64,000 bases of DNA from IMGVR_UViG_3300023179_000009:62001-126000, one strand, 5' to 3'; counted from the stretch's first letter, positions 5,720 to 59,043 are shown. The notes: a model not told the origin generated them from the letters alone. Program-made: numbers and translations.

Positions 5720-5739
5720 AAAAAACAACAAATTTTTGA

Positions 5740-6287: not shown

Positions 6288-6506
6288 TCAATTGAAAAAC
6301 AATTGAGTCTCGGCCTCGGCTTCAAGCCAAAATTTTTGACTTTCTTCCTCGCTTACTGGAGTTCCCCCAGTTGCTGCTAACCATTTAAAATAAGCAAGTT
6401 CACGAACATCATTGTCTTGTTCAACCTGTGTATTTTGGCACCCGGTTGTGCCTCCACAACATTTGGTTTCAATTGTTTCATTGTTGTTTTTTGAAAAAAA
6501 CCCCAT
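6288..6506 (-). CDS. DUF2934-like small protein
   Basis: VRELAYFKW...FWLEAEAE resembles the IxxRAYxxW...WLxAExE pattern. Confidence 0.6.
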   Translation of the reverse strand: MGFFSKNNNETIETKCCGGTTGCQNTQVEQDNDVRELAYFKWLAATGGTPVSEEESQKFWLEAEAETQLFFN

Positions 6507-6547
6507 AAATCTAACTCCTTTAATTATGAAAACACAAAACTACTATC

Positions 6548-6575
6548 ATTATAATATTTTGATAAAAGTTGTCAA
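6548..6575 (-). promoter_or_regulatory. sigma70-type promoter TTGACA-N16-TATAAT
   Basis: Perfect -35 and -10 hexamers on minus strand. Confidence 0.75.
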
Positions 6576-6603
6576 TATCTAAAAAAAAAACTAAAATACG
6601 GTT

Positions 6604-41898: not shown

Positions 41899-42414
<516 letters not shown>

Positions 42415-42417: not shown

Positions 42418-42846
42418 GTGCAAAATTTTAAATTTAAATATTTTTTTGAACAAATGTATTCTTCAATCGGCGTTGTTGAATATGGACCCGGTTTGAAGGT
42501 TGTTGCTATTATAGATCAAGGAATTGTTGACTTTTATAGGAATTTGATACCAAAATATTATAATGTTAATCCTCAAAAACACAAAGCCCATATAACAATT
42601 GTTCGTGAAAATAAAGAAAGCCCCAAAAATATGGAATTTTGGGGCAAATACCAAAATAAAAAAATAGATTTTTTTTATGATAACAATGTACAAACAGATG
42701 GTGTTTATTTTTGGCTTGACGCATTAAGTGAAGATATCGGAAAAATAAGAGAAGAATTGGGTCTTTCAAAATTTAGAGATGATAGAGAATTTGGGGGCAA
42801 ACTTAGATCTGCATACCACATTACAATTGCGAACACAAAAACATGA
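42418..42846 (+). CDS. 2H phosphoesterase
   Basis: Two HxT motifs: AHITIV and YHITIA. Confidence 0.75.
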   Translation: MQNFKFKYFFEQMYSSIGVVEYGPGLKVVAIIDQGIVDFYRNLIPKYYNVNPQKHKAHITIVRENKESPKNMEFWGKYQNKKIDFFYDNNVQTDGVYFWLDALSEDIGKIREELGLSKFRDDREFGGKLRSAYHITIANTKT

Positions 42847-43001
42847 AAAAAAATAAAAAAGATTTTTTGGATGCAGCAACAATATTTTATATTGGTAGAA
42901 TTACATTTATTGCAATTTTTCAAGCTGTTGTGGGCAGATTTTTTGTAAAAACTTTTGAGCCTTATTGGATCAAATTTAAAGATTGGTATTCAAAAAAATG
43001 A
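42843..43001 (+). CDS. 52-aa hypothetical protein (not in ORF track)
   Basis: ATGA overlaps at both ends. Confidence 0.5.
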   Translation: MKKNKKDFLDAATIFYIGRITFIAIFQAVVGRFFVKTFEPYWIKFKDWYSKK

Positions 43002-44392
43002 ATGTGGATGTTGTCGATAAATTTTTAAAAAATAATAGAAACAAAAAAATTAAAATTCATTGCATTGGCGATGCAATTATAGATGAATACTACAATGTAA
43101 AAGTAGACAGAATCAGTCCCGAACACCCTGTCCCTGTTATGTCTTGTCAAAACGAACATGTCTCCAGACCTGGGGGCGTAGCTAATGTTGCCTATCAATT
43201 AAAGCATCTTAATGTTGATTCAATTCTTACGTGTTTTCCTGATGAGAATGCTTTAAATTTGTTTCAAAATCATAAAATTAAAATAAAATGCAAAGAACTA
43301 CCTGTAAAACCTATAATTCCAGTAAAAAGAAGATATTTAGACGACGACATTCAGGTTGCCCCAAGACATGATTTTGAATTTCCTTTTTGCAATTTAAAAG
43401 CCAAAGATATTGATGATTATTGCTTGTTTGTCAAACAAGCAATAATCGAAGAAAAACCAGACGTTGTAATTCTGTCGGACTACGATAAAGGTTTTTTTTC
43501 AAGTGAAAATTATAAGATAATAGATTTTTGTAAAGGTATAAAAACTATAGTCGATCCAAAAAAAGCACCTTTAGAAAAGTGGAAAGGATGCACAGTTTTT
43601 AAACCCAATTCAAAAGAATCCAATGAACTGACAGGTAAAAAACACTGGCGTGATCAGGCAAAATTTTTATATGATTTCCTTGAGTGCGAATCTGTTGTGA
43701 TTACTTTTGGTGGAGAAAAAGTAGTTGGAATTTACAAGGAAGAGTTTTTTGAATTTTATCCTAAAAATAAAGTATCCAATGTTCAAAGTGTTATAGGTGC
43801 CGGTGATTGTTTTATGGCCTTTTTTGCAACGGCTGTAGGTCACGGATTTAACCCGATAGAATCCTCAGAGATTGCTTGGACAGCAGGGTCTGTTTATGTT
43901 CAACATAAAAAAAATCGTCCAGTTGTCCCGGCAGAACTTTGTGCCAGCAAAATAGTTTTTCCAGAGGATTTAAGATCAAGAGATTTTAAATTGGTCTTTA
44001 CTAACGGTTGTTTTGACATTTTGCATAAAGGCCACATTGAGACACTTAAATTTGCCAAAAGCAAAGGCGACAAACTGGTTGTTGCTTTAAACTCGGATGA
44101 TAGTATTAAAATTATAAAAGGACCGAACAGGCCCGTTGTCTCTCTTGAGCAGCGTATGTCGGTTATGGAATCTATTCAATATGTAGATTTTGTTGTTTTT
44201 TTTGACGAAGACAATCCTTTGAGTTTGATTAAAAAAATACAACCTGATGTTGTTGTTAAAGGCTCAGAATATAATTTGGATTCTATTGTTGGTCACGATA
44301 TTGTTAAAGAAGTTTATCAAGCACCTATGGTGCCAAATATTAGCACTAGCATTATTCTTAAAAATTATTTCTCTGAGCAAACGCAATCTTGA
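42998..44392 (+). CDS. hldE: Bifunctional ADP-heptose synthase HldE/RfaE-like
   Basis: PfkB kinase (PGGVANV, LSDYDKG, VIGAGD) fused to nucleotidyltransferase (FTNGCFDILHKGH, VVKGSEY). Confidence 0.88.
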   Translation: MNVDVVDKFLKNNRNKKIKIHCIGDAIIDEYYNVKVDRISPEHPVPVMSCQNEHVSRPGGVANVAYQLKHLNVDSILTCFPDENALNLFQNHKIKIKCKELPVKPIIPVKRRYLDDDIQVAPRHDFEFPFCNLKAKDIDDYCLFVKQAIIEEKPDVVILSDYDKGFFSSENYKIIDFCKGIKTIVDPKKAPLEKWKGCTVFKPNSKESNELTGKKHWRDQAKFLYDFLECESVVITFGGEKVVGIYKEEFFEFYPKNKVSNVQSVIGAGDCFMAFFATAVGHGFNPIESSEIAWTAGSVYVQHKKNRPVVPAELCASKIVFPEDLRSRDFKLVFTNGCFDILHKGHIETLKFAKSKGDKLVVALNSDDSIKIIKGPNRPVVSLEQRMSVMESIQYVDFVVFFDEDNPLSLIKKIQPDVVVKGSEYNLDSIVGHDIVKEVYQAPMVPNISTSIILKNYFSEQTQS

Positions 44393-44532
44393 CAAAGGCA
44401 TTCCATACTACAATTGTTGTTGCAACAACATATTTTTCTGCCAGAATTGCACTTGCAACCATTGCATTTTTTTGTTTGACAACCCGAGATGCAGACCAAA
44501 GTAAAAATTAAAAATAATTTGATGAAAATCAT
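44365..44532 (-). CDS. 55-aa Cys-rich putative lipoprotein (not in ORF track)
   Basis: MIFIKLFLIFTLVCISG-CQTKKCNGCKCNSGRKICCCNNNCSMECLCQDCVCSEK; SD GAGG. Confidence 0.65.
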   Translation of the reverse strand: MIFIKLFLIFTLVCISGCQTKKCNGCKCNSGRKICCCNNNCSMECLCQDCVCSEK

Positions 44533-44539
44533 TTTTTAA

Positions 44540-44559
44540 ACCTCTAAATATTTAGAGGT
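44540..44559. promoter_or_regulatory. 20-bp palindrome giving TAAATA plus GAGG on both strands
   Basis: ACCTCTAAATATTTAGAGGT between divergent starts 44532 and 44564. Confidence 0.6.
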
Positions 44560-44563
44560 ATTT

Positions 44564-45388
44564 ATGGATAATAAAATTGGTTTTTGTTTCACCGGAGAGG
44601 GTGCCAGAGGATCCATACAGTCTGGAATTGCTTTAGGGCTTCACAAGCAAGGGATTGATGCTGATTTTACTATCGGAATATCATCCGGTTCCATATGTGC
44701 TGCATCTTATGCTTATTTGGGACCACAAGGTGTTGCTGATATGTGGTCCGATATAAAAAATATTTTTGATGTTTTTGGTTTTAATTATAACTTTTTTTGG
44801 AAGTCTGGGTTACTTAACCAAAAACCCATGGAGAAAATTGTAAGAAAAGCTGTTCAAAATCAACCTATATGCGAAAGCGTTGTTGTAAGAATGAATATTG
44901 AAAATGGTTATATGGACTATGTTTCAAACACATCAGTTGATAAAGAGCAATTCGTTGAGGCTGTTTTGGGGAGCGTGGCTATCACCGCTCTTGTTGAAGA
45001 CAGGGATGGCTGGGTAGACGCAGGAAGCAGGCAATTGGCTCCTTTAGAGCAGTGCATATCGGCTGGCTGCAATAAAATTTATGTTATTATGGGTAGAAGA
45101 TTTGATATTGACGAATGGAAAAAACCAAAAGGCTTCTTATCTGCTACAAGAATGGCTTATCGTGCATTGGACATAAGTCTTAACGAAATAATGATGAGAG
45201 ACATAAATTTTTGTTTGAAAAATGAGGATAATCCGGGTTATCGAGGTGTTGAGATACATCTGGTGCAACCAAAAGAAACACTGTTTGAGTCTGTTAGTTT
45301 TAATCGTTGTAAGGACGGCGTAAAATATGGCGAATCTAATTTTGAAATTGCCGATAGGAAAGGATTGATAAAATATTTCTCTTTGTGA
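44564..45388 (+). CDS. Patatin-like phospholipase
   Basis: GEGARG, GISSG nucleophile, WVDAG. Confidence 0.85.
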   Translation: MDNKIGFCFTGEGARGSIQSGIALGLHKQGIDADFTIGISSGSICAASYAYLGPQGVADMWSDIKNIFDVFGFNYNFFWKSGLLNQKPMEKIVRKAVQNQPICESVVVRMNIENGYMDYVSNTSVDKEQFVEAVLGSVAITALVEDRDGWVDAGSRQLAPLEQCISAGCNKIYVIMGRRFDIDEWKKPKGFLSATRMAYRALDISLNEIMMRDINFCLKNEDNPGYRGVEIHLVQPKETLFESVSFNRCKDGVKYGESNFEIADRKGLIKYFSL

Positions 45389-45398
45389 TATATATTTT

Positions 45399-45713
45399 AT
45401 GAGTTTATCTTTTAAAAATTGGCTGAAATCAGAGTCGCAAGCTATAGGATCCACTGGTAAAAGTGATTTACCAACAGGAGTCGCCAAGGCTGCTGGAAAA
45501 GTTGCTCAAAGTTTTTTAGCTCAAGACGCAAACGCATCCGATGTTGCAAAAATTGTTGGCAAAACCAATAACACTTCAAATCTAATCAAATTAGGAGCAC
45601 AAGCCGTCGAAACCGCCCCGAACTCTGATGCCAAGGGGACAAATGCCTTGCAGGTTGCTAGTGCCATTCAAAAAACTGCCGCACAAACAAAACTTAAAAT
45701 GAACAAAAAATGA
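45399..45713 (+). CDS. Ala-rich hypothetical, capsid-targeting-like N-terminus
   Basis: MSLSFKNWLKSE. Confidence 0.7.
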   Translation: MSLSFKNWLKSESQAIGSTGKSDLPTGVAKAAGKVAQSFLAQDANASDVAKIVGKTNNTSNLIKLGAQAVETAPNSDAKGTNALQVASAIQKTAAQTKLKMNKK

Positions 45714-46246
45714 AATTTAAAGATTATTGTGTCGATTGTGATTTTTTAAATTCTAAATTTTTTGAACAAAACTTTTTTACTTTTAAGGATTTTAAAAAAA
45801 ATTTAAATAGTTCAATAAATTTGAAAGGCCCAACCTCCGTCAAGCGATCTTTGGCTGCTGGAAAAGTTAGAAGTCCTTCAAGGCCGGTTGTGTTTTCTTC
45901 TTTAAATAAGCCTTCCGTCATCCCGTCTGTTTTGGAAAATAAAGGCATAAATTCGTGTTTACAAAAAAATGTTGATTTTGTTGTAAACAAAATCAAGGAT
46001 CATCACGAAAGACTTTCAAAAAAATACAACTCCACCTTAGCAACAATGATCATATCTGCTGCTTTGGTTGGTTCATTGTTTCCCATTCCTGGTGCTACGA
46101 TTTTTTCTTGTCTTCCTTTTTTGGGTTTAGCGGAAATGATAAACTTTTTGAAAAAAAATCCCAAAATACTTAAAAAAATAGACATGTTCTACTCCGCTGA
46201 TAAGCATGATGTTGAAAAAGACGCAATTCAAATTGATGTCTTGTAA
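45710..46246 (+). CDS. Hypothetical protein with C-terminal hydrophobic segment
   Basis: MKFKDY start; LATMIISAALVGSLFPIPG. Confidence 0.6.
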   Translation: MKFKDYCVDCDFLNSKFFEQNFFTFKDFKKNLNSSINLKGPTSVKRSLAAGKVRSPSRPVVFSSLNKPSVIPSVLENKGINSCLQKNVDFVVNKIKDHHERLSKKYNSTLATMIISAALVGSLFPIPGATIFSCLPFLGLAEMINFLKKNPKILKKIDMFYSADKHDVEKDAIQIDVL

Positions 46247-46305
46247 TTAATTTAAAAACACGTTATAATTAATTGAACACACTTGATTAAAAGCAAGGAA
46301 CACTA

Positions 46306-48393
46306 ATGTCTGACAAATCATCGACCCTTAAAAAATATTCTGATTTTTATGATCGTAAAGAATTTTTGTCTTTAAATGAAGAAATGTCTTTTGGTGAATA
46401 TTTGGATCTATGTCGAGAAAACCCAAAACTAGCCAGAAATGCTTTTCAATATGTTTACGACATGATAGTTGAAAAAGGTACCAGCACCTTTGAAAGATAC
46501 AGAAAAACTTATACTAAGTATCATTTTTTTGATGATAATGAGATACCAGTTTTTGGATTAGAAGAAACGTTGTCAAGTTTTGTTGATTTTATTCACGGGG
46601 CAGCAGGCGGTTACGGTACCGAACACCGTGTTCTATTATTACATGGCCCAGTCGGTTCTTCAAAATCAACAATTTGCCGCAGGCTTAAACGTGGTTTGGA
46701 ACAATATTCAAAAACGCAGGACGGTGCTTGGTATACATTTAAATGGGTAAATTTGCCAGTTGTTGCGGATGATAAAGGACCGGCTGTTTTTGTAAACAAA
46801 GAAGATGTTTGTCCAATGAACGAAAATCCAATCAAACTCATGCCCGGATCAATGAGAAAAGAATTTTTGAAAGATTTAAATGAAAAACTAAAAGACTCCT
46901 CATCAGAAGTCGAGCGAGAAACTCTTTATGTGCTTGATAGTGAGGGCGATTTAAATCCAAGATGTAAACTTTTTATGTCGATGCTTTTAAAGAGATACGA
47001 TGGTGATTGGGCTGCGGTTGTTGAAAACCACGTTAGAGTAATTCGTCGCACCCACTCCGAAACGGACAGGGTTGGAATTGGAACCTTTCAACCTAAAGAT
47101 GAAAAAAACCAAGACTCCACAGAGTTAACTGGCGATATGAATTTTAGCAAGATAGGTCAATTCGGCTCGGACTCTGATCCTCGTGCTTTTAATTTTGATG
47201 GCGAATTTGAAATTGCCAATCGTGGTGTTTGTGAATTTATTGAAATGCTTAAACTTGATAATGCTTTTCTTTATGACCTTTTAGGAGCAACCCAAGAACA
47301 TTCTATTAAACCAAAGAAATTTTCTCAGGTTAATATAGATGAGGTCATTGTTGCTCACACTAATAACCCAGAATTTGAGAAGTTAAAGAATAATCAATTT
47401 ATGGAAGCACTAAGAGATAGAACAGTTAAGGTGGATGTTCCTTATCTCTTACGTTGGAGTGATGAAATTAAAGTTTACGAACACACTTACGGCCCAGGCA
47501 AAGTTCGTCAACACATAATGCCTCACACTCTTGAGATAGCTGCTTTATTTGCTGTGCTAACTCGATTGGAAGATGATGGTAATGGCAAACTTGATTTGCG
47601 GGATAAGGCTAAACTTTATGATGGAAAGCAACTCCCAGGCTGGACAGAAGACACTGTCAAGGAATTGCGTGATAAATTCCCAGATGAGGGCTTTCACGGT
47701 CTTTCGGCAAGATATGTTCAAGATAAGATTGCAAATCGTCTTGCTCGTCACAAAGATTATGTGAATGTTTTTCATGTTTTGAGCGAACTTAAAGATGGTT
47801 TAAGTCAATCTTCTTTGATAACTAAGGTAGAAGACATTAAGAGATATGAATTTTGTGCAGAGTTGGCAATTAAAGAATTGGATGAAATTTTGAAAAATGA
47901 AGTTCAACGTGCCTTAGTTTCAGATGAGAAGGCTATAGAGCGTATGTGTTCTAAGTATGTTGATAACGTAATAGCTTATGTTAATGATGAAAAAATGATT
48001 CATCCAATCACGGGATCTAAAATGGACCCTGATGAGCGATTGATGCGTTCTATTGAAGAAAAGGCAGGCATACCAGAGCAAGGTTGTGATGATTTTAGAA
48101 GAAGTTTGGCAGCTTTTATAGGCACACTTGCTACTCGTCAAAAACAATTCAAGTGGGATAGCAACCCTGAGTTGAAGCGTGCTTTGGAGTCTAAAGTTTT
48201 TGAAGATGTTAAGGACACTATTAAATTATCTTCTTTAACAAAAGAAGCTTCTCAACTAGATCCTGATCTTCAAGAAAAAATAGACGCCATCAAAACAAGG
48301 TTGATAAAGCAGTACGGATACAATCAACAATCAGCAACCGATGTTTTAGAATATTGTAGTTCTATTTTTGCAAGAGGAGACATTCAAAGATAA
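46306..48393 (+). CDS. prkA: PrkA/YeaG family AAA+ serine kinase-like protein
   Basis: LLHGPVGSSKST, QDSTELTG, ANRGVCEFIE, AHTNNPE, EALRDR. Confidence 0.93.
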   Translation: MSDKSSTLKKYSDFYDRKEFLSLNEEMSFGEYLDLCRENPKLARNAFQYVYDMIVEKGTSTFERYRKTYTKYHFFDDNEIPVFGLEETLSSFVDFIHGAAGGYGTEHRVLLLHGPVGSSKSTICRRLKRGLEQYSKTQDGAWYTFKWVNLPVVADDKGPAVFVNKEDVCPMNENPIKLMPGSMRKEFLKDLNEKLKDSSSEVERETLYVLDSEGDLNPRCKLFMSMLLKRYDGDWAAVVENHVRVIRRTHSETDRVGIGTFQPKDEKNQDSTELTGDMNFSKIGQFGSDSDPRAFNFDGEFEIANRGVCEFIEMLKLDNAFLYDLLGATQEHSIKPKKFSQVNIDEVIVAHTNNPEFEKLKNNQFMEALRDRTVKVDVPYLLRWSDEIKVYEHTYGPGKVRQHIMPHTLEIAALFAVLTRLEDDGNGKLDLRDKAKLYDGKQLPGWTEDTVKELRDKFPDEGFHGLSARYVQDKIANRLARHKDYVNVFHVLSELKDGLSQSSLITKVEDIKRYEFCAELAIKELDEILKNEVQRALVSDEKAIERMCSKYVDNVIAYVNDEKMIHPITGSKMDPDERLMRSIEEKAGIPEQGCDDFRRSLAAFIGTLATRQKQFKWDSNPELKRALESKVFEDVKDTIKLSSLTKEASQLDPDLQEKIDAIKTRLIKQYGYNQQSATDVLEYCSSIFARGDIQR

Positions 48394-48442
48394 TCAATAA
48401 TTATATTTAATATTGTAAACATTATTGAGAGCGAGGTGTGCT

Positions 48443-49621
48443 ATCCCTAAAAGAATTCAAGAAGATCACAAAAGATTCAGGGACGTAGTTTCCGGAAGAA
48501 CAAGAAGGGAACTCAAGCGTCTAATCAAATCAGGTGCGATAGTTCGGCAAAGGCCAAAAGGTGGCAAGGTTACTATTTCCATTCCACAAATTGACATTCC
48601 ACACTTTGTTCATGGTGACTCAGGTGAAGGGATTGGTCGGGGTCCGGGGAAAGAAGGTGATACTATTGGCCGTGACCCACAGCCCGGTAATGGCAATCAA
48701 GCTGGAGATCAAGAAGGTGAGGGCATTCACATTCAAATCGACATGGAGGATGTTCTTGCTTTTATGGAAGAAGAGTTAAAACTTCCATTTATGAAACCTA
48801 AGCCGAACGAAACATTTGAAGAAGTTAAGATCAAGTATAATGATATTTCAAAAGTTGGTCTTAACTCATTGCGGCACACACGCCGTACAATGAAAGAAGC
48901 ATTGAAGCGTCTGGCGATGGGAGGCAAGTTGGACCAAGTTCAACTTGTCCCCGGAGCCAGCGTTCCAATGAAAGTTATAACACCTATTAAACAAGATTTT
49001 CGTTATAGGCAATATCGTGAAATAAAAATACCAGCATCCAATGCTGTGATATTTTTCGCCAGAGATTGCTCTGGATCGATGGATGATTATAAGTGCGACA
49101 TAGTTTCGGATATGGCTTGGTGGATAGACCGTTGGATAAAAAGATTTTATAAAAGGGTAGATCATTGTTATTATGTTCATGACACACGTGCTCAAGAAGT
49201 TAATGAGCAAGAATTTTATACTTATAGATACGGGGGAGGAACCCAATGCTCCTCGGCATTTGAATCAATATCCCAGCAATTTGAAAACAGATATCCTCCT
49301 CAAAAATTTAACATTTATGTTTTTTATTTCACCGATGGCGATAATTGGGATAATGATAATGAAAAAGTAGTAAAAATAATTCAAGAAAAATTTCCTCAAG
49401 GAGTTGTAAATTTCGTAGGAATAACTCAAATTTGTTCATATTCAAATGAAAATAGTGTAAAAGAATTTATTGATAGAAAAATAAAATCAAATGAACTTGA
49501 CGCAGAACACATCAGAACTGCCGAAGTTGGATCAAATCTAAGAAATGGCAAAATGAGTGAAGATGATCGGAACAGTCAGATTCTGGATGCCATTAAAAAA
49601 CTCTTATCTGTAGAAGCATGA
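48443..49621 (+). CDS. yeaH: YeaH/YhbH (DUF444) vWA protein
   Basis: MIDAS DCSGS, GGGTQCSS, YFTDGDNW; probable ATC start after GAGGTG. Confidence 0.9.
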   Translation: MPKRIQEDHKRFRDVVSGRTRRELKRLIKSGAIVRQRPKGGKVTISIPQIDIPHFVHGDSGEGIGRGPGKEGDTIGRDPQPGNGNQAGDQEGEGIHIQIDMEDVLAFMEEELKLPFMKPKPNETFEEVKIKYNDISKVGLNSLRHTRRTMKEALKRLAMGGKLDQVQLVPGASVPMKVITPIKQDFRYRQYREIKIPASNAVIFFARDCSGSMDDYKCDIVSDMAWWIDRWIKRFYKRVDHCYYVHDTRAQEVNEQEFYTYRYGGGTQCSSAFESISQQFENRYPPQKFNIYVFYFTDGDNWDNDNEKVVKIIQEKFPQGVVNFVGITQICSYSNENSVKEFIDRKIKSNELDAEHIRTAEVGSNLRNGKMSEDDRNSQILDAIKKLLSVEA

Positions 49622-50613
49622 GTGATAAAAAGTTTAAAGAATTTGTTGACCAAGGTGTTGCGGCAGCAAATAATTATTTTTATACTGGTAGATATGTTAA
49701 CGCTTTAGAAATACTGTCAGCAGTTAAACAGGTTGATCCGAATAATGATATTGTTGAGTTGCTTATTCAGAAAATTTGTTGTGAACAATTTAATATCAAG
49801 TCTCCCGATTTAAATTATTATTTTGGAGAACATTGGCTTGGTCAATCGCTAGAAAATAAAAGTATAGAAATTTTTTGTGACCAAGGAATGGGAGACACAA
49901 TAAATTTACTTCGTTATGTAAAACAATTAAAGAAAGAATATCCCAATTGTAAAATTGTTTTGAATTATTATGCTTTTTTTAATCAATTTGAAAGGTTAAT
50001 GCAAAATCAATCTTATATTGATTTATTTACTCCTTTTCACACTAAGTGTGATTATCATACAAATATAATGAGCTTACCTTGTATTCTTAATGGGATACAA
50101 CTTGATATTTATTACCCGGTTCATTTTGATAAAATCTTAGACTTGCCTCCGCCGCCTCAAATTTATTTTGAAGAATTTGAATCTTTAAATTTAAGTGATA
50201 AAAATAAAATAGGTGTAGTTTGGCAAACAAATATAGATAATCCATTATCTAAACAAAAATCAATAAATGTTGAACTTTTTGATATTTTTAAAGATTTAGA
50301 TTTTGAATTTTATTGTTTACAACCACAGGTCAAAACCCCAGATTGGATCGATTGTTTGCCAATCGAAGACCTACACGACACAGCCAGATTCATAACACAA
50401 TGTGATTTTATTATATCTGTTGATACTGTCACACTGCATCTTGCTGGAGTTTTAGGTAAAAAAACTTTTGGATTAATTCCTTTTGATCACGATCCCAGAT
50501 GGGGCGAAGGCTCCAATAACATTTGGTACCCATCAGTGGAGTTGTTTAGACAAAACAATGATCAAGATTGGTCTATTGCTCTAAATCAAATAAAAGATAA
50601 AATAAAAATTTAA
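49618..50613 (+). CDS. TPR plus GT9-like (heptosyltransferase-type) glycosyltransferase
   Basis: DQGMGDTI, IGVVW, IISVDTVTLHLAG, PRWG. Confidence 0.75.
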   Translation: MSDKKFKEFVDQGVAAANNYFYTGRYVNALEILSAVKQVDPNNDIVELLIQKICCEQFNIKSPDLNYYFGEHWLGQSLENKSIEIFCDQGMGDTINLLRYVKQLKKEYPNCKIVLNYYAFFNQFERLMQNQSYIDLFTPFHTKCDYHTNIMSLPCILNGIQLDIYYPVHFDKILDLPPPPQIYFEEFESLNLSDKNKIGVVWQTNIDNPLSKQKSINVELFDIFKDLDFEFYCLQPQVKTPDWIDCLPIEDLHDTARFITQCDFIISVDTVTLHLAGVLGKKTFGLIPFDHDPRWGEGSNNIWYPSVELFRQNNDQDWSIALNQIKDKIKI

Positions 50614-50623
50614 AGGACAAAAA

Positions 50624-52228
50624 ATGAACAAGTCTAAAATGATGAGCGGATCTCCTATCTTAACGGGAGATAATAATATTCCAGGATTAAAGATTCACAA
50701 AGAAGTCTTAAAAGTCCTTCCACAAATAGAAGAATCTTGTCACAAGATGGGCTTAGATTATTTTCCCATTATTGTTGAGTTTGTAAGATATGACGAAATG
50801 GCTGAACTAGCCAGCTACGGAGGGTTTCCTGTTCGCTATCCTCATTGGCGATTTGGCATGGAATATGAAGAGATGGCTCGTGGTTATGAACACGGTCAAT
50901 ATCGTATATCAGAAATGGTGATCAACGCCTGCCCCTGTTACATATATTGCATGGATTCAAATACTTTAGTTGATAATGTTGATGTTATTGCACACGCTAT
51001 TGGTCATAATGATTTTTTTAAGAATAACATCTTTTTTGAGCCAACAGACGAGAATATGATGAACAAGTTGGCAAATCACGGCACAAGGATTAGAAAATAC
51101 ATGGCTCGTTGGGGACACGAAGTCGTAACAGAATTTATAGATCATTGTTTAAGGCTAGATACTTTAATCGATCCTCACCGGGCTTGGCAAAAAAAGAAGA
51201 TCAAACAATCGGTTGTTCGTGATGAAAGAAAATATCAACATCCCAAGCGGCTAAAATCACAAAATAACTATATGGACGAATGGGTCAACAGCAAAGATTA
51301 TATTGATCAACAAAATGAAGATATTAAAAAACAAGAAACGGCCCACTTTCTTGATATTTTTGAGGGATCTTGCAAGGACATTCTTGGTTACTTAAAGGAC
51401 AACGCTCCTTTAAAACCTTGGCAACAAGATATTATTTCTATGCTTTACGATGAAGCAATGTATTTTAGCCCACAACGTGCAACTAAAATGATCAATGAAG
51501 GTTGGGCTAGTTTTGTAGATTACCACATCCTATGTAGGATGGGATTGGCATCATTAGGTCAACCTAGCGAAGATGCCGGTATTTGGCACTACGCAGAACA
51601 CAAAATGAGAGTTCTTGGCGGAAAATATAGTCAAAATCCTTATAAACTTGGTTTTGAATTATTTTTAGACATAGAAGATCGATGGAATAAAGGAAAATTT
51701 GGCGATGATTGGGAAAATTGCAATAACATGCACGAAAAAGAAAATTGGGATAAAAAATTAGGTTTGGGGATGGATAAAATTTTTGAGGTAAGAAAAAATT
51801 ATAATGACTTTCTTATGATTCAAGAATTCTTTACACCCGAATTTTGTGAAAAGAAACAATTTTTTGAATGGAAACATTTTCCTAATGGCGAATATAAAAT
51901 TGTAAATCGTGACTTTAAAAGTATTAAAAAGAAATTATTACAAAAATACTTAAACGCAGGTCTTCCCGATATACGTCTTTTAGACCCCAATCATTTGGGC
52001 AAAGGTTGGTTTTATATGGAACACCAATCAGACGGTAGAACTCTTTATGATAGTTACGCTCGTGAAACTATCACATCTATACAAAAAATTTGGAAAAATG
52101 TTGTGGTTTTGTCCACTAAAAATAAAGATGGAGTCGAGTGCGTTTATGTTTGTGACGGGTCTCAACAAGATAAAAATGTTCATTATATGACTAGAGAAGA
52201 ATATGAAAAAGAATTCCTAAATAATTGA
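50624..52228 (+). CDS. spoVR: SpoVR/YcgB family protein
   Basis: YPHWRFG, EMVIN.CPC, AHAIGHNDFF, TKMINEGWAS, NPYKLG. Confidence 0.93.
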   Translation: MNKSKMMSGSPILTGDNNIPGLKIHKEVLKVLPQIEESCHKMGLDYFPIIVEFVRYDEMAELASYGGFPVRYPHWRFGMEYEEMARGYEHGQYRISEMVINACPCYIYCMDSNTLVDNVDVIAHAIGHNDFFKNNIFFEPTDENMMNKLANHGTRIRKYMARWGHEVVTEFIDHCLRLDTLIDPHRAWQKKKIKQSVVRDERKYQHPKRLKSQNNYMDEWVNSKDYIDQQNEDIKKQETAHFLDIFEGSCKDILGYLKDNAPLKPWQQDIISMLYDEAMYFSPQRATKMINEGWASFVDYHILCRMGLASLGQPSEDAGIWHYAEHKMRVLGGKYSQNPYKLGFELFLDIEDRWNKGKFGDDWENCNNMHEKENWDKKLGLGMDKIFEVRKNYNDFLMIQEFFTPEFCEKKQFFEWKHFPNGEYKIVNRDFKSIKKKLLQKYLNAGLPDIRLLDPNHLGKGWFYMEHQSDGRTLYDSYARETITSIQKIWKNVVVLSTKNKDGVECVYVCDGSQQDKNVHYMTREEYEKEFLNN

Positions 52229-52229
52229 T

Positions 52230-53003
52230 ATGGAAAACATACCTCAAATTAGAACTCTTTTCATATCGGATGTTCATTTAGGAAGCAGGCATTCTTCAAC
52301 TAAAAATTTATTAGAGTTTTTAAATTACATAAAAGAAAATCATAAAATAGAAAAATTGTATATAGTTGGAGATTTTATAGACGGTTGGAAATTAAAGAGA
52401 AATTGGTATTGGAACGATGAAGCCAGTTTAGTTCTTAGAAAAATATTAAGCTTTTTAAGAAGAGAAACAGAAATTTATTATATCGCTGGAAATCATGACG
52501 AATTCATCAGGATATTTATAGAAGATTTTCATATAGGAGACTTTGGATCCATTCACATAGGTAATGAGTTTATTCATAAAACTATAGATGGTAAAAATTT
52601 ATTAGTCGTTCATGGTGATATTTTTGATTTTGCAACAAAGTATGCAAAATGGTTATGTTTTTTAGGAGATATAGGTTATAGTTTACTTTTAAGATTAAAT
52701 AAACTGGTGTCTTTTGTAAGATCTAAATTTAAATTAAAAAATTGGTCTCTAAGTAAGGCTATTAAACACAATGTTAAACACGCAGTCAACTTTATAAGTG
52801 ATTTTGAAAATTGTTTAATTTCTTATACAAAAGAAAAAAAATGTGACGGCTGTATATGCGGTCACATTCACACGCCCGATCTAAAACAGTTATCAGATGG
52901 TTTTATTTACGCCAATACTGGTGATTGGGTAGAATCATGCACCGCAATTTATGAAGATTTTGATGGCAAAATTTTTTTGTTAAATTATAATGTCCCTAGT
53001 TAG
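52230..53003 (+). CDS. LpxH-like metallophosphoesterase
   Basis: FISDVHLG, VGDFID, AGNHD, VHGD, CGHIH. Confidence 0.85.
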   Translation: MENIPQIRTLFISDVHLGSRHSSTKNLLEFLNYIKENHKIEKLYIVGDFIDGWKLKRNWYWNDEASLVLRKILSFLRRETEIYYIAGNHDEFIRIFIEDFHIGDFGSIHIGNEFIHKTIDGKNLLVVHGDIFDFATKYAKWLCFLGDIGYSLLLRLNKLVSFVRSKFKLKNWSLSKAIKHNVKHAVNFISDFENCLISYTKEKKCDGCICGHIHTPDLKQLSDGFIYANTGDWVESCTAIYEDFDGKIFLLNYNVPS

Positions 53004-53323
53004 ATATCCACCGCCTCACTAAATGCCCTATCTATATCATTTTCGGTTAATCCAAGGCTTTGCGTAAGTGGGACCAACATAGGATGACTACGCTCAATAT
53101 ATGGAGCGTATTCCCATTCGACAGATACGCTATCTCGCAAAACTGGATCTTCAATAGTACTAATAGCATCATATGTTTCTAACAACCCATCGGGCGTAAT
53201 TAAATTTAAAATTGAAGATATTGTCAGTTTTTCTGTTGTGTTTCCAGCAGAATTAGTTGCTGGAATAATATAATTTGCATCTGGTATACCTAAAGGCAGT
53301 TCACTAATTTTTATATTTGCCAT
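53000..53323 (-). CDS. Tail-fibre-associated-like small protein
   Basis: MANIKISELP start; WEYA..IER.HP...LGLT..ID..F. Confidence 0.5.
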   Translation of the reverse strand: MANIKISELPLGIPDANYIIPATNSAGNTTEKLTISSILNLITPDGLLETYDAISTIEDPVLRDSVSVEWEYAPYIERSHPMLVPLTQSLGLTENDIDRAFSEAVDI

Positions 53324-53434
53324 ATTTTATCTAATTTTTTAGACTTTTTGGTTCTAAATTGATTTCTAAAAATTACATATCTATGTATAATGTAGAATAT
53401 GGTTTCTTGTTAATAACCAGAAAGGGCAAAAAAT

Positions 53435-54103
53435 ATGCCTCAAGCCAAACAACAAACTCTTTATGATTTGCACACACATTGCATCAATCCGAACACCAGA
53501 GATATTTACTTGCACTCTCACTACACCGAGGACACCGAAGGATCAGAACCTGGGGTTGAATATCGGCAAGCAACAACTTTTATAAAAAATCTTCAATTTT
53601 TAGATCAACCTCAATACAAACCCATACTAGTTCATATCCATTCTCAAGGAGGAAATTGGGACGATGGAATGGCAATGTTTAATTCAGTTCAAGCTTGTCA
53701 ATCGTATGTGACGATGCTTGCTTATTCTCAGGCATCGTCAATGAGCGGTATTATCCTTCAATCGGCACACTTAAGAATAATGATGCCAGATTGTCATTTT
53801 TTAATGCATCACGGATGGAGCGGCGGAGGTCTAATTCATCCTTTTGGTTTAAAAAATGAAGCAGAGTTTCAAATAAGGGCAACAAAAAGAATGTTGCAGA
53901 TATTTGCCGAACGTGCTATTGTAGGGCCTTACTTCAAGAATAAAAAATCGACTAACAAACATTCGATTTATAATTTCTTTGATAAAAAACTTAAAACAGA
54001 GGTTGATTGGTATCTTAATGCGGAAGAATCCGTTTTTTATGGGTTGGCTGATTATATTTTAGGTTGTGAAACATATCCTAATGTTCAATCCTTAAGAGAA
54101 TAA
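53435..54103 (+). CDS. clpP: ClpP-like protease
   Basis: IHSQGG, ASSMSG (Ser), LMHH (His), AEESVFYGLAD. Confidence 0.85.
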   Translation: MPQAKQQTLYDLHTHCINPNTRDIYLHSHYTEDTEGSEPGVEYRQATTFIKNLQFLDQPQYKPILVHIHSQGGNWDDGMAMFNSVQACQSYVTMLAYSQASSMSGIILQSAHLRIMMPDCHFLMHHGWSGGGLIHPFGLKNEAEFQIRATKRMLQIFAERAIVGPYFKNKKSTNKHSIYNFFDKKLKTEVDWYLNAEESVFYGLADYILGCETYPNVQSLRE

Positions 54104-54137
54104 GATAACATTTTTAACCTCTCAAAGGAGTGAGAGA

Positions 54138-54674
54138 GTGAAAAATAAAAGATTTAGTCATAGTCTTAAACAAAAGTACGATTTGCTCGGTAAAAAATTA
54201 GCCGCTGAAATAATGCAAGACATTGTTAAGGCAAAGTTAATCACAGATAATCTTAAAGAAGATTCTGGCGACTTCACAGACGGTTTTTGGGACCAAAAAT
54301 ATCGTCTTCCCAGTGGCAAAGAATTAAAAGTTGAGCCAGAGATGAAAGATGAAAAGTGGTGGGGAAATCAATGGTCTTCTTCAAGGCCATTTCGATATGA
54401 AGACATGGATATTCCCTTTAGAAAAGCAAAAAATCAAGCACACCTTCACATCGTTATCAGTACTTGTGAGAATTTTGCTTTTTTACTTACTAGAGATGCC
54501 ATGAATGAAGCTCTTGAAGAATCTGGCGGAATGCCTAAGATTAAGAAAACAATTTATGAACCTAACGGTGCGGCCTACTTTAGCACCCCAGTAAATAAAG
54601 GTTATTTTGTTTACAGGAAAAAAGATGGTCGTTGGGCTAAGTGGAAAAAATTAGCAAAGGAATTAGTTAAATGA
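54138..54674 (+). CDS. Hypothetical protein
   Basis: 178 aa, SD AAGGAG. Confidence 0.65.
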   Translation: MKNKRFSHSLKQKYDLLGKKLAAEIMQDIVKAKLITDNLKEDSGDFTDGFWDQKYRLPSGKELKVEPEMKDEKWWGNQWSSSRPFRYEDMDIPFRKAKNQAHLHIVISTCENFAFLLTRDAMNEALEESGGMPKIKKTIYEPNGAAYFSTPVNKGYFVYRKKDGRWAKWKKLAKELVK

Positions 54675-56215: not shown

Positions 56216-59043
56216 TTGGAAACTACAGGATACGAAAACCTTCATAGACATAGCGATTTTAGCCTCAAAATTTAGGGGCCTTAATGACGAAAGTCATTAA
56301 GCAAACTGGATGAATTCGGGGAAGCCCTAACGTAAAGACGAGGGTAATCCCGAGCCAAGCATGTAATGCATTACATGAAGGTGTAGAGACTACTGGCGAG
56401 GTTTAGCCCTCTTAATTACCAGCAAGAGCGTCCAGCACCCCTAGGGGTGATGATATAGTCCACTCCACAAGAAACTGTGGGCAAAAGTGCTTAGACGGGT
56501 TTGCAAAAGTATCTGAATATGCCGAGTATCAAAAGCAAATAAATCAAAAGTATTTGTGTATCACCGATCATGGTGTGATGGGGGCTATTCCACAACAAGT
56601 TGCAGAATCTGAAAAACATAATTTATATCCTTTGTTTGGATGTGAACTTTATGTTAATCCGATGCAACCAAAAGTTTCTTCACGATCAGAGTCGGCGGAG
56701 TTTCGTAAATCTTTAGAAGATGAAGCAACGCAAAAAAAGTTTGATAAATCTTATCATTTATTGGCCATAGCCTACAATGATGAGGGTTATTCTAATCTTG
56801 TTCGTTTAACTTCTTGGGGCTGGATACACGGCTTCTATAGAAAGCCTAGGGTAAATCATGAAGCACTCATGAAATATAAAGAAGGAATTGTGTTCACCTC
56901 CGCCTGTGCCAACTCAGAAATAGCAAGAGCTTTTTTTGATGGTGGCGACGAGGCTGGCTTCGCCATGTTGGAAAAATATATGGCTATGTTTGGTGAGCAT
57001 TTTTATCTTGAACTTATGATGCTCGATTTTAAAGATCAAAAGCCTTATGATGCTTTTTTAATTCGTGCTCATGATAAGTATCATGTTCCGCTGACAATGA
57101 GCACCGATTGTTTTGTTAAAGGCACTTTGGTTCTAACTAATTTTGGTTTCAAAAATATCGAAGAAATTAAAGTTGGCGATAAGGTTTTTACTCATAAAAA
57201 CAGGTGGAGGTTAGTTGAACATGTTGGATCACGTTCACTAAGATCAAATGAAAAAATTTACCGTGTATCAACTAGTGCTGGTACATTTGCTTATGAAGCT
57301 ACGGGCAATCACGAAGTATATGTGGCCACTTATGAAAAAAATAAATGGAACTTTGATTGGGTAAGAACAGACGGATTGAAATCAAAAGAACACCACCTCA
57401 CAGTTCCTAAGATAAGTGAATCTAAAGTTTTCTCCGAAAAGGATTTAAGCGAAATAGATATTTTGTCCTTCTTGAAAAAAGAAGATTTTCAAGAAGGAAC
57501 AGACTACAAATCATCCAGAAAAGGCAACATGGGTTGCCGCCTTCAGTTCAACAGGGACACTCAAGAATTTTGGTCTTATCGTGGTTGGGATAGAAAATTT
57601 AGAACCACTATTCCCAGAATGTTAAAGGTAGATGATGATTTTGTTAAAATGTTGGGATGGTATATCGCTGAAGGTTGGAGTGAAAAAAATAGCAATCAGG
57701 TGGGTTTTGCTTTTCACATAGAAGAAAAACATGTAGCTGAGTGGTTAATTTCTTATTTTTCACGTTTTGATATTATTGCAAAGATTTATAAGGTCTCTGA
57801 GAACGGTATAGCAATTCGTTTTTCTTCAGTTGTCTTTAATCGTCTTTTGGGTCAAATGTGTGGTTTTGGTGCTAAAAACAAACATCTACCGAAGCCCAAC
57901 AATCAAGTTTGGCTAAAGATGTGGTCGAAAAGACAACTTTCTATGATTATTCGTGAGTATTGGCGTGGCGATGGGGGCAACGCTGCAAATAATGATGGTT
58001 TTATTTTCACATCCACATCTAAAATTTTAATACAAGAGATCGCTTTTGTTTTTAATTCTTGTGGTGTTTTTTCTTTACCTTGTGAAGAAAAAAATAGAAA
58101 AGATACATGGAATACCAAAAAATATATATCCTACACGGGAGGAAGAGGCGATCAAGTGTTGTCTTTTTTAACGAATGGAGATTGTAAGCCTTTTTTGCAC
58201 AAGGAAGTAATTGAATTTAAAGATTATTATTTGGTGCCAATCAAAGAAATCACTGCTCTTAAACACCAAGAACAAGAAGTTCACTGTTTTCAGGTAAAGG
58301 ACGATCATTCGTTCACTGCTAATCTTTACGCTGTGAGTAACTGCCACTACTGTCTTAAAGAGCAAAGTCATAATCAACGTCTTATGCTCATGCAGCAAAA
58401 CAAAAGAACGCTTGCTGAGATGGAGGCACTTGTAGAATCCGGCCAAGCAGAGGATCTATTTGAACTACAAGACACAAATCTATGGCTGAAGAGTGAGGAT
58501 GAACTAAATGAAATGTGGGAAGAAAAATTTCAAGATGTTATCGATTATGAACTTTTCAAACAATCCAAAGCAAACACAGTCAAGATTGCAGAGTTTGCCA
58601 AAGGCGTACAAATCAATAAAGAAATAAAACTTCCTAAAATAAATGACGCAGATGCACTTTTGTGGGAAGAAATCAAAAAAGGTTTTATGAAGCGTGGTTG
58701 TCCTAGAACTCCTGTTTATATAAAGCGAATCCGTGAAGAATACGATCTAATTTCAGAGAAGGGCTTTTCTAGTTACTTTTTAATTCAAAAAATGATGGTG
58801 GATGAAGCTCGAAGGAAGAGTCCAGAGATATTAGGTTTTGGAGACGGATCAGAAGCCGTTGGTCCTGGTAGAGGTTCGGTTGCTGGCTCTTTGGTTGCCT
58901 ATTGTCTTCGTCTTCATGATGTGGAGCCAATATTCCACGATTTGAGATTTAGTCGTTTTCTAAGTCCAGCACGTGGTGGCAAGCAAATGAAAATTCGCCA
59001 CACAATAGACCCAATATCTCATGAATCAATCAATTTGGATTAA
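56216..59043 (+). CDS. dnaE: DNA polymerase III alpha, N-terminal part only (PHP plus start of palm); exons 56216-56265 and 56490-59043; contains intein
   Basis: TTG start after AGGAGA; spliced HRHSDFSLLDG, TDHG, GCE, STD|CHY, GPGRGSVAGSLVAY, RFSRFLSPAR then stop. Confidence 0.9.
56266..56489 (+). ncRNA. Group I intron (224 nt, no ORF) in dnaE
   Basis: P GAATTCGGGGAA, Q AATCCCGAGC, R GTAGAGACTA (56383), S GATATAGTCC (56452); U.G in P1, terminal G; removal restores the frame. Confidence 0.92.
57109..58341 (+). mobile_element. Intein with LAGLIDADG endonuclease (411 aa) in DnaE PHP domain
   Basis: CFVKGTLVLT...VGDKV, ATGNHEV, MLGWYIAEG, REYWRGDG, ...AVSN|C. Confidence 0.93.

What the first reader, a model, noticed from the sequence alone, without database searches (positions are those of the whole stretch)
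46306..52228. Complete prkA-yeaH-spoVR triad in a phage, with a TPR-GT9 gene wedged inside
Seen: all three genes intact (Walker A, MIDAS DxSxS, SpoVR HxxGH and NEG) and tightly coupled with a glycosyltransferase between yeaH and spoVR, then an LpxH-like hydrolase. Established: YeaG/YeaH/YcgB are bacterial starvation/sporulation-linked proteins of unclear mechanism (AAA+ with vWA partner). Inference: phage control of host dormancy or stress state, possibly tied to protein or envelope glycosylation.
Basis: partly seen in the sequence, partly recalled or inferred. Interest (0 to 1): 0.65.

Follow-up and report, generated by a model that had tools for sequence, protein, structure and literature searches.

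The report
Phage PrkA-YeaH-SpoVR operon with glycosyltransferase insert
A 459-kb freshwater phage carries an intact, slowly evolving copy of the bacterial PrkA-YeaH-SpoVR stress module; the sugar-transferase gene lodged inside it is conserved in one phage clade but most likely works with the phage's sugar-activating gene HldE, not with the module.

Summary
Window 46306-52228 encodes PrkA, YeaH (DUF444), a 331-aa GT9-fold glycosyltransferase (GT9L) and SpoVR, packed with gaps of -4 to 31 nt. The record is a 458,813-bp phage (terminase, DnaB, UvsX), not a cell.

The triad itself is not new in phages. Thermus phage phiYS40, Ralstonia phage RsoM2USA, three PHROG families and 65 IMG/VR loci carry it.

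The insert is specific to one clade. It sits between yeaH and spoVR in every relative whose PrkA is at least 74% identical (15 loci and the window). It is absent from all relatives at 68% or below, and 78 cellular loci encoding GT9L relatives have no triad gene within 6 kb.

GT9L folds like the ADP-heptose transferases WaaC, WaaF and TibC. An HldE-like gene lies upstream in all these phages. GT9L and HldE evolve about five times faster than PrkA and SpoVR. One relative has HldE and GT9L with no triad in the locus, and another has a TPR-GT9-HldE operon beside an uninterrupted triad.

The best reading is two interleaved, co-expressed modules. Direct action of the transferase on the triad is unproven. 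As a side lead, SpoVR models as a zincin-like fold, which suggests an AAA+/vWA/metallohydrolase machine.

The parts
42983..44392 (+). HldE-like bifunctional sugar kinase/adenylyltransferase, the presumed donor-sugar (ADP-heptose) supplier for GT9L
   Evidence: PfkB plus CTP_transf_like domains. NCBIfam HldE 268 bits (below the 521 cut-off), rfaE_dom_II 160 bits, rfaE_dom_I 148 bits. Found upstream of the triad in every GT9L locus that reaches that far. Abuts a TPR-GT9 gene in L113.
44564..45388 (+). Patatin-like phospholipase, a variable neighbour and not part of the unit
   Evidence: PF01734 2e-8. Among the surveyed loci, present only in L003 and L086/L122.
46306..48393 (+). PrkA: AAA+ ATPase with PrkA C-terminal domain
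   Evidence: PF08298 1e-81 and PF06798 3e-71. PHROG 22605 3e-111. PDB 9xip E=2e-206. P-loop GPVGSSKS 114-121. 74-99% identical across the clade.
48425..49621 (+). YeaH/YhbH: DUF444 vWA protein with MIDAS motif
   Evidence: PF04285 2e-65. NF003711 300 bits and TIGR02877 228 bits. DCSGS 214-218. Its stop overlaps the GT9L start by 4 nt.
49618..50613 (+). GT9L: soluble GT-B glycosyltransferase of GT9 type with a 3-helix TPR-like N-terminal stub
   Evidence: AF2 pLDDT 94. Foldseek top hits WaaC, WaaF, 3tov and TibC. Invariant G90, G92, D93, D269, T270, H274 and G277; K214 conserved in at least 90% of sequences. The SVDTxxLHLAG motif aligns with WaaC D261, T262 and H266. About 88 full-length homologues at 34-96% identity. 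Same slot in 15 related loci.
50624..52228 (+). SpoVR/YcgB family protein, modelled as a zincin-like helical fold
   Evidence: PF04293 2e-104. Invariant H74, E97, H124, H128, N291, E292 and G293 in 31 phage sequences. AF2 pLDDT 84. VIA-align top 50 almost all zincin metallopeptidases, Z up to 10.6.
52230..53003 (+). Calcineurin-type metallophosphoesterase ('LpxH-like'), a lineage-specific add-on
   Evidence: PF00149 1e-13. LpxH model 57.9 bits against a cut-off of 134. Only in the window and L086/L122.

Best explanation
Two functional modules are interleaved in one co-transcribed block of a huge freshwater phage.

Module 1 is a vertically inherited, strongly constrained phage copy of the bacterial PrkA-YeaH-SpoVR system. 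It comprises an AAA+ ATPase (PrkA), its vWA/MIDAS partner (YeaH), and SpoVR. I infer that SpoVR is a zincin-like metal-dependent hydrolase or substrate-binding subunit. Together they would form an ATP-driven protein-remodelling or protein-degrading machine. Expressed from the phage, it would impose or override the host's starvation/stationary-phase programme during a long infection of nutrient-limited lake bacteria.

Module 2 is GT9L, a soluble GT9-fold transferase descended from TPR-GT9 proteins. It most likely uses the ADP-heptose made by the phage HldE-like enzyme to glycosylate a protein acceptor. GT9L was inserted between yeaH and spoVR in the ancestor of one clade and has been inherited there ever since. 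It therefore shares the triad's expression, but it is not required by the triad and does not require it.

Shown: gene identities, folds, motifs, synteny, distribution and relative rates. Inferred: the donor sugar, the acceptor class, the proteolytic or remodelling role, and the effect on the host.
For: Triad identity and integrity.

Strong constraint on the triad. Across the clade PrkA is 74-99% and SpoVR 70-98% identical, against GT9L 34-93%, HldE 48-90% and ClpP 50-84%. Tree path from the window to L003: PrkA 0.13, SpoVR 0.15, GT9L 0.67, HldE 0.78. Inteins sit in SpoVR (L103/L092).

The triad works as a unit in bacteria. yeaG, yeaH and ycgB show cofitness in six species (10.1101/072470). PrkA is an ATPase, with ATP-dependent caseinolysis reported in one study (PMC9512850).

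SpoVR fold. Nearly all of the top 50 matches are zincin metallopeptidases. HAIGH lies in one helix and NEG at the start of another.

GT9L as an enzyme. The fold matches are ADP-heptose users only, and the conserved D-T-x3-H motif aligns with the WaaC ADP-heptose site.

GT9L pairs with HldE rather than with the triad.
- L084 has ThyA-DHFR-HldE-x-GT9L and no triad in the locus.
- L113 has TPR-GT9 overlapping HldE, beside an uninterrupted triad.
- P0087 sits in an unrelated phage context.
- The genome holds four GT9-like paralogues, one with a full TPR array.
- The N-terminal motif (N19, T23, A29) is kept in members not linked to the triad.

The triad occurs without GT9L in every phage with PrkA at 68% identity or below. 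None of 78 cellular loci encoding GT9L relatives has a triad gene within 6 kb.

Vertical co-inheritance: the trees are congruent where resolved.

Co-expression is plausible: the genes overlap or are 10-31 nt apart.
Against: The slot has been kept over deep divergence (GT9L down to 34% identity), while flanking genes (patatin, HNH, peptidase M14, phosphoesterase) come and go. That could reflect selection for coupling to the triad.

Other glycan genes gather at the same place. An FkbM methyltransferase lies between yeaH and GT9L in a subclade. A GT2-methyltransferase fusion follows spoVR in L003. Several GT2 genes lie between HldE and PrkA in LR756511.1.

HldE is present without GT9L in more distant phages, so the HldE-GT9L pairing is not exclusive.

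The phage lacks GmhA and GmhB, so heptose supply depends on the host.

The donor sugar is not established. In one cellular genome the TPR-GT9 gene is followed by PseB- and PseC-like genes, and such genes lie near it in 5 of 78 loci. This resembles the gene neighbourhood of FlmG, which uses pseudaminic acid.

The catalytic Glu of HExxH is missing in SpoVR (A125). The fold Z-scores of 8-10.6 are in the range that helical models can reach by chance.

One study found negligible protease or kinase activity for PrkA (PMC13001217).

There is no expression data.
Confidence: 0.55

Rival explanations
1. Integrated four-gene system. GT9L glycosylates a triad protein or the triad's client proteins, so glycosylation gates or targets the AAA+/vWA/SpoVR machine.
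For: Translational coupling: 4-nt yeaH/GT9L overlap and 10 nt to spoVR. GT9L lies immediately upstream of spoVR in every clade member. The slot is kept down to 34% GT9L identity. Further glycan genes (FkbM, GT2) gather around the triad in three lineages. The TPR heritage points to a protein acceptor.
Against: The triad is complete and conserved without GT9L in other phages and in bacteria. GT9L exists without the triad. GT9L evolves about 5 times faster than its supposed partners. Unrelated genes (Dam methylase, HNH, inteins) also insert at the triad's junctions.
Confidence: 0.2
2. GT9L is a canonical envelope enzyme. With HldE it adds heptose to host LPS core or another surface glycan, for example to block superinfection or change receptor display. 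It is merely parked inside the triad.
For: The best structural matches are the LPS heptosyltransferases WaaC and WaaF. An HldE-like gene is linked. FkbM and RfbT-like methyltransferases, typical of O-antigen modification, sit next to GT9L in a subclade.
Against: The family's nearest cellular relatives are TPR-GT9 fusion proteins. In one genome such a gene lies next to pseudaminic-acid-type genes. This resembles the architecture of the flagellin glycosyltransferase FlmG, whose TPR domain binds the protein substrate. TibC, a protein heptosyltransferase, is also among the top matches. Sequence similarity to WaaC is confined to the nucleotide-sugar motif.
Confidence: 0.15
3. GT9L and HldE hypermodify phage DNA by glycosylating a modified base, as T4 glucosyltransferases (also GT-B) do.
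For: HldE always follows the thymidylate synthase-DHFR (or ThyX) genes. GT-B enzymes glycosylate DNA in T-even phages (general knowledge).
Against: The ThyA homologue scores above the thymidylate synthase equivalog cut-off (208 against 108 bits) and is paired with DHFR, the ordinary dTMP cycle. No structural match to DNA glucosyltransferases appears among the top hits. TPR-bearing paralogues point to protein acceptors.
Confidence: 0.05
4. Artefact or cellular DNA: the block is a bacterial operon on a misbinned contig, or a chimeric assembly.
For: The triad is typically bacterial. PrkA is 'serine protein kinase' in JGI annotations.
Against: The record is a 458,813-bp virus, CheckV 91%. Terminase, DnaB, UvsX, gp32-like SSB and DNA polymerase lie in the same window. 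The same order is seen on more than 20 independent contigs up to 693 kb. Contigs from three other studies bridge every junction. Bacterial genomes sampled have PrkA at 34% identity or less.
Confidence: 0.02

Closest known systems
Bacterial yeaG-yeaH-ycgB / prkA-yhbH-spoVR module
   Same: The same three Pfam families in the same order, with P-loop lysine, MIDAS DxSxS and SpoVR HxxxH/NEG motifs intact. In bacteria the three genes behave as one unit.
   Different: It is encoded by a phage. PrkA falls below the E. coli YeaG equivalog cut-off (220 against 576 bits) and is only 28-34% identical to the proteobacterial copies sampled. It is closest to the solved 692-aa PrkA 9xip. The operon is interrupted by a glycosyltransferase.
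Triads of cultured and metagenomic phages (Thermus phiYS40/TMA, Ralstonia RsoM2USA, LR745206, LR756504, LR756511.1)
   Same: Large phages carrying all three genes.
   Different: They are only 25-30% identical (61% for LR756511.1), so probably separate acquisitions. The gene order differs in phiYS40 (YeaH-SpoVR...PrkA). None has GT9L inside the triad.
GT9 heptosyltransferases WaaC/WaaF and the protein heptosyltransferase TibC
   Same: GT-B fold with the best structural matches. The conserved D-T-x3-H nucleotide-sugar motif aligns to WaaC 261-266. An HldE-like ADP-heptose gene is linked.
   Different: Pfam GT9 is below threshold. There is an extra N-terminal 3-helix TPR-like stub. Donor and acceptor are untested.
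FlmG-type TPR-glycosyltransferases (flagellin O-glycosylation)
   Same: The architecture of the cellular relatives and of one phage paralogue is an N-terminal TPR array plus a C-terminal GT-B domain. One relative is followed by PseB- and PseC-like genes. FlmG's TPR domain binds the protein substrate (PMC7591256).
   Different: Direct homology to FlmG was not tested. GT9L keeps only a stub of the TPR region. Only 5 of 78 cellular loci have Pse-type genes nearby. The phage supplies HldE, not Pse genes.
AAA+ plus zincin proteases (FtsH) and MoxR-vWA chaperone pairs
   Same: The parts list is an AAA+ ATPase, a vWA/MIDAS partner and a zincin-like fold. This is an analogy only.
   Different: The parts are on three separate polypeptides. 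SpoVR lacks the HExxH glutamate. No activity has been shown.

Membership tests
PrkA/YeaG family | AAA_PrkA (PF08298) plus PrkA C-terminal domain (PF06798) above gathering score | tested here: met
   275 and 241 bits against a cut-off of 25.
PrkA/YeaG family | Walker A lysine needed for ATP binding (B. subtilis K108) | tested here: met
   GPVGSSKS 114-121 with K120. The same variant occurs in solved PrkA 9xip. K108 role from PMC9512850.
PrkA/YeaG family | E. coli YeaG equivalog (NF011999) | tested here: not met
   220 bits against a cut-off of 576. It is a different PrkA subfamily.
YeaH/YhbH (DUF444) | PF04285 above threshold and MIDAS DxSxS | tested here: met
   222 bits against 27. DCSGS 214-218.
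SpoVR/YcgB | PF04293 above threshold and conserved HxxxH and NEG | tested here: met
   350 bits against 27. H124, H128, N291, E292 and G293 are invariant in 31 phage sequences.
Zincin metallopeptidase fold (for SpoVR) | Zincin fold | tested here: inconclusive
   VIA-align Z 8-10.6 to DUF885, M30, M1, M3, M4 and M32, with nearly all of the top 50 being zincins. This Z range can arise by chance for helical models, and Foldseek finds nothing.
Zincin metallopeptidase fold (for SpoVR) | HExxH with catalytic Glu | tested here: not met
   The motif is HAIGH, and A125 is nearly invariant.
CAZy GT9 / Pfam Glyco_transf_9 | Pfam PF01075 above gathering score | tested here: not met
   16.6 bits against 22 for the window protein. 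About a third of family members carry a precomputed PF01075 hit.
CAZy GT9 / Pfam Glyco_transf_9 | GT-B fold closest to solved GT9 enzymes | tested here: met
   The top nine Foldseek matches are all WaaC, the Veillonella GT9 3tov or WaaF, followed by the TibC chains, probability 1.00.
CAZy GT9 / Pfam Glyco_transf_9 | C-terminal nucleotide-sugar motif (WaaC D261, T262, H266) | tested here: met
   SVDTvtLHLAG aligns to WaaC VSVDTGLSHL. D269, T270 and H274 are invariant.
CAZy GT9 / Pfam Glyco_transf_9 | N-terminal catalytic Asp (WaaC D13) and use of ADP-heptose | not testable with these tools
   G90-x-G92-D93 is invariant after strand 1, but no residue-level superposition was available. The donor needs an enzyme assay.
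TPR proteins | Pfam TPR repeat models | tested here: not met
   No TPR hit in the window protein; it has only three N-terminal helices. TPR arrays are present in paralogue G000:C1:4149 (538 aa), in L113 and in cellular relatives.
HldE (ADP-heptose synthase) | Kinase and adenylyltransferase domains at equivalog score | tested here: inconclusive
   Both domains are present, but NF008454 scores 268 against 521, rfaE_dom_II 160 against 181.5 and rfaE_dom_I 148 against 345.
LpxH | NF003743 / TIGR01854 equivalog score | tested here: not met
   57.9 against 134 and 46.3 against 190 bits. It is a generic metallophosphoesterase.

The most novel reading that the evidence does not exclude
The four genes form one machine. 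A phage-encoded AAA+ (PrkA), vWA (YeaH) and zincin-like (SpoVR) protease or remodeller has its subunits or clients marked by heptosylation from GT9L, fed by phage HldE. This would give huge phages a glycosylation-gated switch over host starvation or dormancy physiology. It would also reveal the long-sought biochemical role of SpoVR as the hydrolytic subunit of the PrkA system.
Probability: 0.12. Interest if true: 0.8.

Novelty: new variant of a known kind. Interest (0 to 1): 0.45.

Why it matters
The PrkA/YeaG-YeaH-SpoVR/YcgB triad is one of the most widespread bacterial modules whose biochemistry is still unknown.

Large phages have acquired it, probably several times. One big freshwater clade keeps PrkA and SpoVR at 70-99% identity while its neighbours diverge about five times faster, and inteins sit in SpoVR. 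This argues that the module does something important during infection. It also offers compact, host-independent versions for biochemistry.

The zincin-like model of SpoVR gives a concrete, testable idea: AAA+ unfoldase, vWA adaptor and metal hydrolase. That could reconcile conflicting reports on PrkA 'protease' activity.

The inserted GT9-type transferase, three paralogues and a phage HldE point to heptose-type protein glycosylation as a trait of huge phages. Whether or not it touches the triad, this trait is little explored.

Tried and rejected
- Complex prediction for SpoVR with GT9L gave no verdict (score 0.21, mark 0.32). It is not evidence either way.
- The promoter/terminator scan of 42800-54300 was at chance level: 47 against 44.5 expected promoters, and 7 against 5.8 terminators. 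The operon structure therefore rests on spacing only.
- Expression. No RNA run holds the stretch, and the metatranscriptome X23 laid nothing.
- Read laying was given 5,923 letters.
- Searching the rest of the 539-kb contig behind L084 for a triad elsewhere was not possible because the record is not held. 'L084 lacks the triad' therefore holds for the 15-kb locus only.
- No paper was found for PDB 9xip/9xiq/9xir, nor any linking SpoVR to zincins.
- Foldseek against PDB gave nothing for SpoVR.
- No GmhA or GmhB was found in the phage.
- Model coordinates are not exposed, so the H124/H128/E292 geometry could not be measured.
- Cellular TPR-GT9 loci were screened for Pse genes; only 5 of 78 were positive, too few to assign a donor sugar.
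- The large representative-protein search was not used. The word search and family scans settled family membership.
- The idea that the LpxH-like gene belongs to the unit was rejected on distribution and score.


Full report
WHAT IS THERE

The window is bases 62001-126000 of a 458,813-bp IMG/VR virus record that CheckV rates 91% complete. The same 64 kb encodes a large terminase, a DnaB-like helicase, a UvsX-like recombinase, a gp32-like SSB and DNA polymerase pieces. The 'cellular contig' way out is therefore closed.

On the + strand the region reads as follows:
- ThyA 40996-41898
- DHFR 41902-42414
- an HldE-like kinase/adenylyltransferase 42983-44392
- a patatin-like lipase 44564-45388
- two small ORFs
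- PrkA 46306-48393
- YeaH 48425-49621
- a 331-aa protein, here called GT9L, 49618-50613
- SpoVR 50624-52228
- a metallophosphoesterase 52230-53003
- a ClpP-like protease
- GMP reductase
- an intein-bearing Pol III alpha

The three triad proteins hit their Pfam families at 1e-65 to 1e-104. The PrkA P-loop is the variant GPVGSSKS, which it shares with the solved PrkA 9xip (E=2e-206).

The gaps between the four genes are 31 nt, -4 nt and 10 nt. Contigs from three independent freshwater studies bridge each junction, so the arrangement is not an assembly artefact.

THE INSERTED GENE

By sequence alone GT9L is only a sub-threshold GT9 match. It has about 88 full-length homologues at 34-96% identity, many on contigs of 100-690 kb.

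An AF2 model built on 35 of them is confident (pLDDT 94). Its best PDB matches are the ADP-heptose enzymes WaaC, WaaF, a Veillonella GT9 and the protein heptosyltransferase TibC.

The family has invariant G90-x-G92-D93, D269-T270 and H274; K214 is conserved in at least 90% of sequences. The D-T-x3-H block aligns with WaaC residues 261-266. It therefore looks like an active GT9-type transferase.

The 'TPR' part is a three-helix stub. Real TPR arrays are seen in a 538-aa paralogue in the same genome, in the L113 gene and in the cellular relatives.

The cellular relatives are at most about 31-34% identical, over the GT part only. None of 78 such loci has PrkA, YeaH or SpoVR within 6 kb. In Rhodocyclus the gene is followed by PseB- and PseC-like genes. 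This recalls the flagellin glycosyltransferase FlmG, whose TPR domain binds the protein substrate (PMC7591256). Only 5 of 78 loci show such neighbours, and homology to FlmG itself was not tested.

DISTRIBUTION

The triad is not new in phages.
- PHROGs holds a family for each protein.
- Thermus phages phiYS40 and TMA are annotated 'SpoVR' and 'serine kinase'.
- RsoM2USA has ORF28 and ORF30, and several 600-kb metagenomic phages have all three genes.
- spoVR has been reported as an abundant viral auxiliary gene (PMC8940887).

A PrkA profile finds 65 IMG/VR loci. In 60 of them PrkA, YeaH and SpoVR follow in that order; in the other five the locus ends within or shortly after PrkA or YeaH. The group at 47-50% identity is also viral, with a gp32-like SSB and UvsX next door. 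The word search finds at least 120 clusters at 66-99% identity, on contigs up to 691 kb.

Identities of 25-30% to the Thermus, Ralstonia and 630-kb phages suggest several acquisitions; no joint tree with cellular sequences was built. Proteobacterial copies sampled are only 28-34% identical, in 44 of 201 genomes. No true PrkA was found in 101 genomes of the phylum of a Melioribacteraceae genome.

WHERE THE INSERT OCCURS

GT9L lies between yeaH and spoVR in all 15 related loci whose PrkA is at least 74% identical to the window's, apart from one locus cut off just after PrkA. It lies there in none of the loci at 68% or below, including LR756511.1, where yeaH abuts spoVR.

The GT9L, PrkA, SpoVR and HldE trees agree wherever they are resolved, so the insert has been inherited vertically.

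Rates differ sharply. On the path from the window to L003, PrkA is 0.13 and SpoVR 0.15 substitutions per site, against GT9L 0.67 and HldE 0.78.

DOES THE TRANSFERASE BELONG TO THE TRIAD OR TO HldE?

An HldE-like gene lies upstream in every GT9L locus that reaches far enough.

Evidence for a tie to HldE, independent of the triad:
- L084, a 539-kb contig, has ThyA-DHFR-HldE-x-GT9L and then ClpP, with no triad gene in the locus. In the GT9L tree it sits inside the clade (86/89 support). Leaving GT9L behind would therefore have taken two flanking deletions.
- In L113 a 417-aa TPR-GT9 gene overlaps the start of HldE on the opposite strand, beside an uninterrupted triad.
- A more distant GT9L relative (P0087) sits among unrelated phage genes.
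- The window's own genome has four GT9-like genes.
- The conserved N-terminal motif of GT9L is kept in the members not linked to the triad.

Evidence for a tie to the triad:
- The slot is very stable.
- GT9L is always directly upstream of spoVR.
- Other glycan genes collect at the same place. There is an FkbM-type methyltransferase between yeaH and GT9L in a subclade. There is a GT2-methyltransferase fusion after spoVR in L003. There are GT2 genes between HldE and PrkA in LR756511.1.
- Against this, the junctions also accept a Dam methylase, HNH genes and an intein.

A structure-based test of SpoVR-GT9L binding gave no verdict.

On balance I read the block as two modules that share transcription. 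I give 0.55 to that reading and 0.2 to real functional coupling.

HOW THE TRIAD MAY WORK

In bacteria the three genes are cofit in six species. PrkA is an ATPase. One group reports ATP-dependent caseinolysis (PMC9512850), while another finds negligible protease or kinase activity (PMC13001217).

The SpoVR model is of good quality (pLDDT 84). In an exhaustive structural scan, almost all of the 50 best matches are zincin metallopeptidases: DUF885, M30, M1, M3, M4, M9 and M32, and also YbeY, with Z up to 10.6.

The invariant H124-x3-H128 lies in one helix, and the invariant N291-E292-G293 lies at the start of another. This recalls the HExxH...NExxSD arrangement of gluzincins; that comparison is from my own knowledge.

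The catalytic Glu is replaced by a nearly invariant Ala. The Z range is one that helical models can reach by chance, and Foldseek finds nothing. This is therefore a lead, not a result.

It does suggest a concrete mechanism: PrkA as the ATP-driven motor, YeaH as the vWA adaptor, and SpoVR as the metal-dependent hydrolytic or substrate-holding subunit.

In a phage of nutrient-poor lakes, such a machine would most plausibly reset the host's starvation state. That last step is inference.

OTHER POINTS

The 'LpxH-like' gene is a generic metallophosphoesterase, below the LpxH cut-off, and occurs only in the nearest relative. The phage has no GmhA or GmhB, so ADP-heptose synthesis would depend on host steps.

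VERDICT

This is a new clade-specific variant (a glycosyltransferase-interrupted triad) of an element already known in phages. Interest is moderate.

Noticed in passing
G000:C1:4149-4244, 207143-207241 and 414319-414417 (loci L099, L097, L098), outside the window: The phage genome holds three more GT9-like genes. One is a 538-aa protein with a full TPR array. The others are 313 aa (34% identical to GT9L) and 325 aa. All keep the GxGD and DTxxxH motifs.
   Followed up: partly
L103:13838-16082 (= L092:11058-13985): SpoVR of a related phage is interrupted by an intein (Intein_splicing plus LAGLIDADG). Two PrkA forms of about 1085 aa in the word search may carry one too.
   Followed up: partly
L085:6207-7031, L108:10394-11278, L114:10407-11270, L103:11910-12794: An FkbM-family methyltransferase (weak RfbT similarity) sits between yeaH and GT9L in a subclade, making a two-gene glycan cassette inside the triad.
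   Followed up: partly
L113:743-3414 (- strand): A 417-aa TPR-GT9 gene overlaps the start of an HldE-like gene, next to ThyX and beside an uninterrupted PrkA-YeaH-SpoVR triad on a 298-kb viral contig.
   Followed up: partly
window 50624-52228: The SpoVR model resembles zincin metallopeptidases (Z up to 10.6). The invariant HxxxH and NEG lie on separate helices, but there is no HExxH glutamate. No paper in the library makes this link.
   Followed up: partly
window 46306-48393: PDB entries 9xip, 9xiq and 9xir ('Serine protein kinase', 692 aa, 30 chains) match the phage PrkA at E=2e-206. No publication could be found.
   Followed up: partly
window 56554-59043: The Pol III alpha (PHP plus NTPase domains) is split by a Hint/LAGLIDADG intein. 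The L003 homologue has the same.
   Followed up: no
L001 (LR756511.1 337950-358007), locus 712-8157: In the 595-kb relative that lacks GT9L, four GT2-type glycosyltransferase genes (up to 969 aa) fill the space between HldE and PrkA.
   Followed up: partly
window 50608: One freshwater run (X5) has a contig with a 1-nt T insertion five bases before the GT9L stop codon. This would change only the last residue or two.
   Followed up: no
Logan contig with P0087 (no DNA served): A 32%-identical GT9L relative lies on a 13.9-kb contig with Prok-JAB, ThiF and an Apyc1-like (anti-Pycsar) metallo-beta-lactamase gene, i.e. among counter-defence-type genes.
   Followed up: no
L105:9134-11389: A Dam-type N6-adenine methyltransferase and two unknown ORFs are inserted between prkA and yeaH in one relative. 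Both junctions of the triad therefore accept foreign genes.
   Followed up: no
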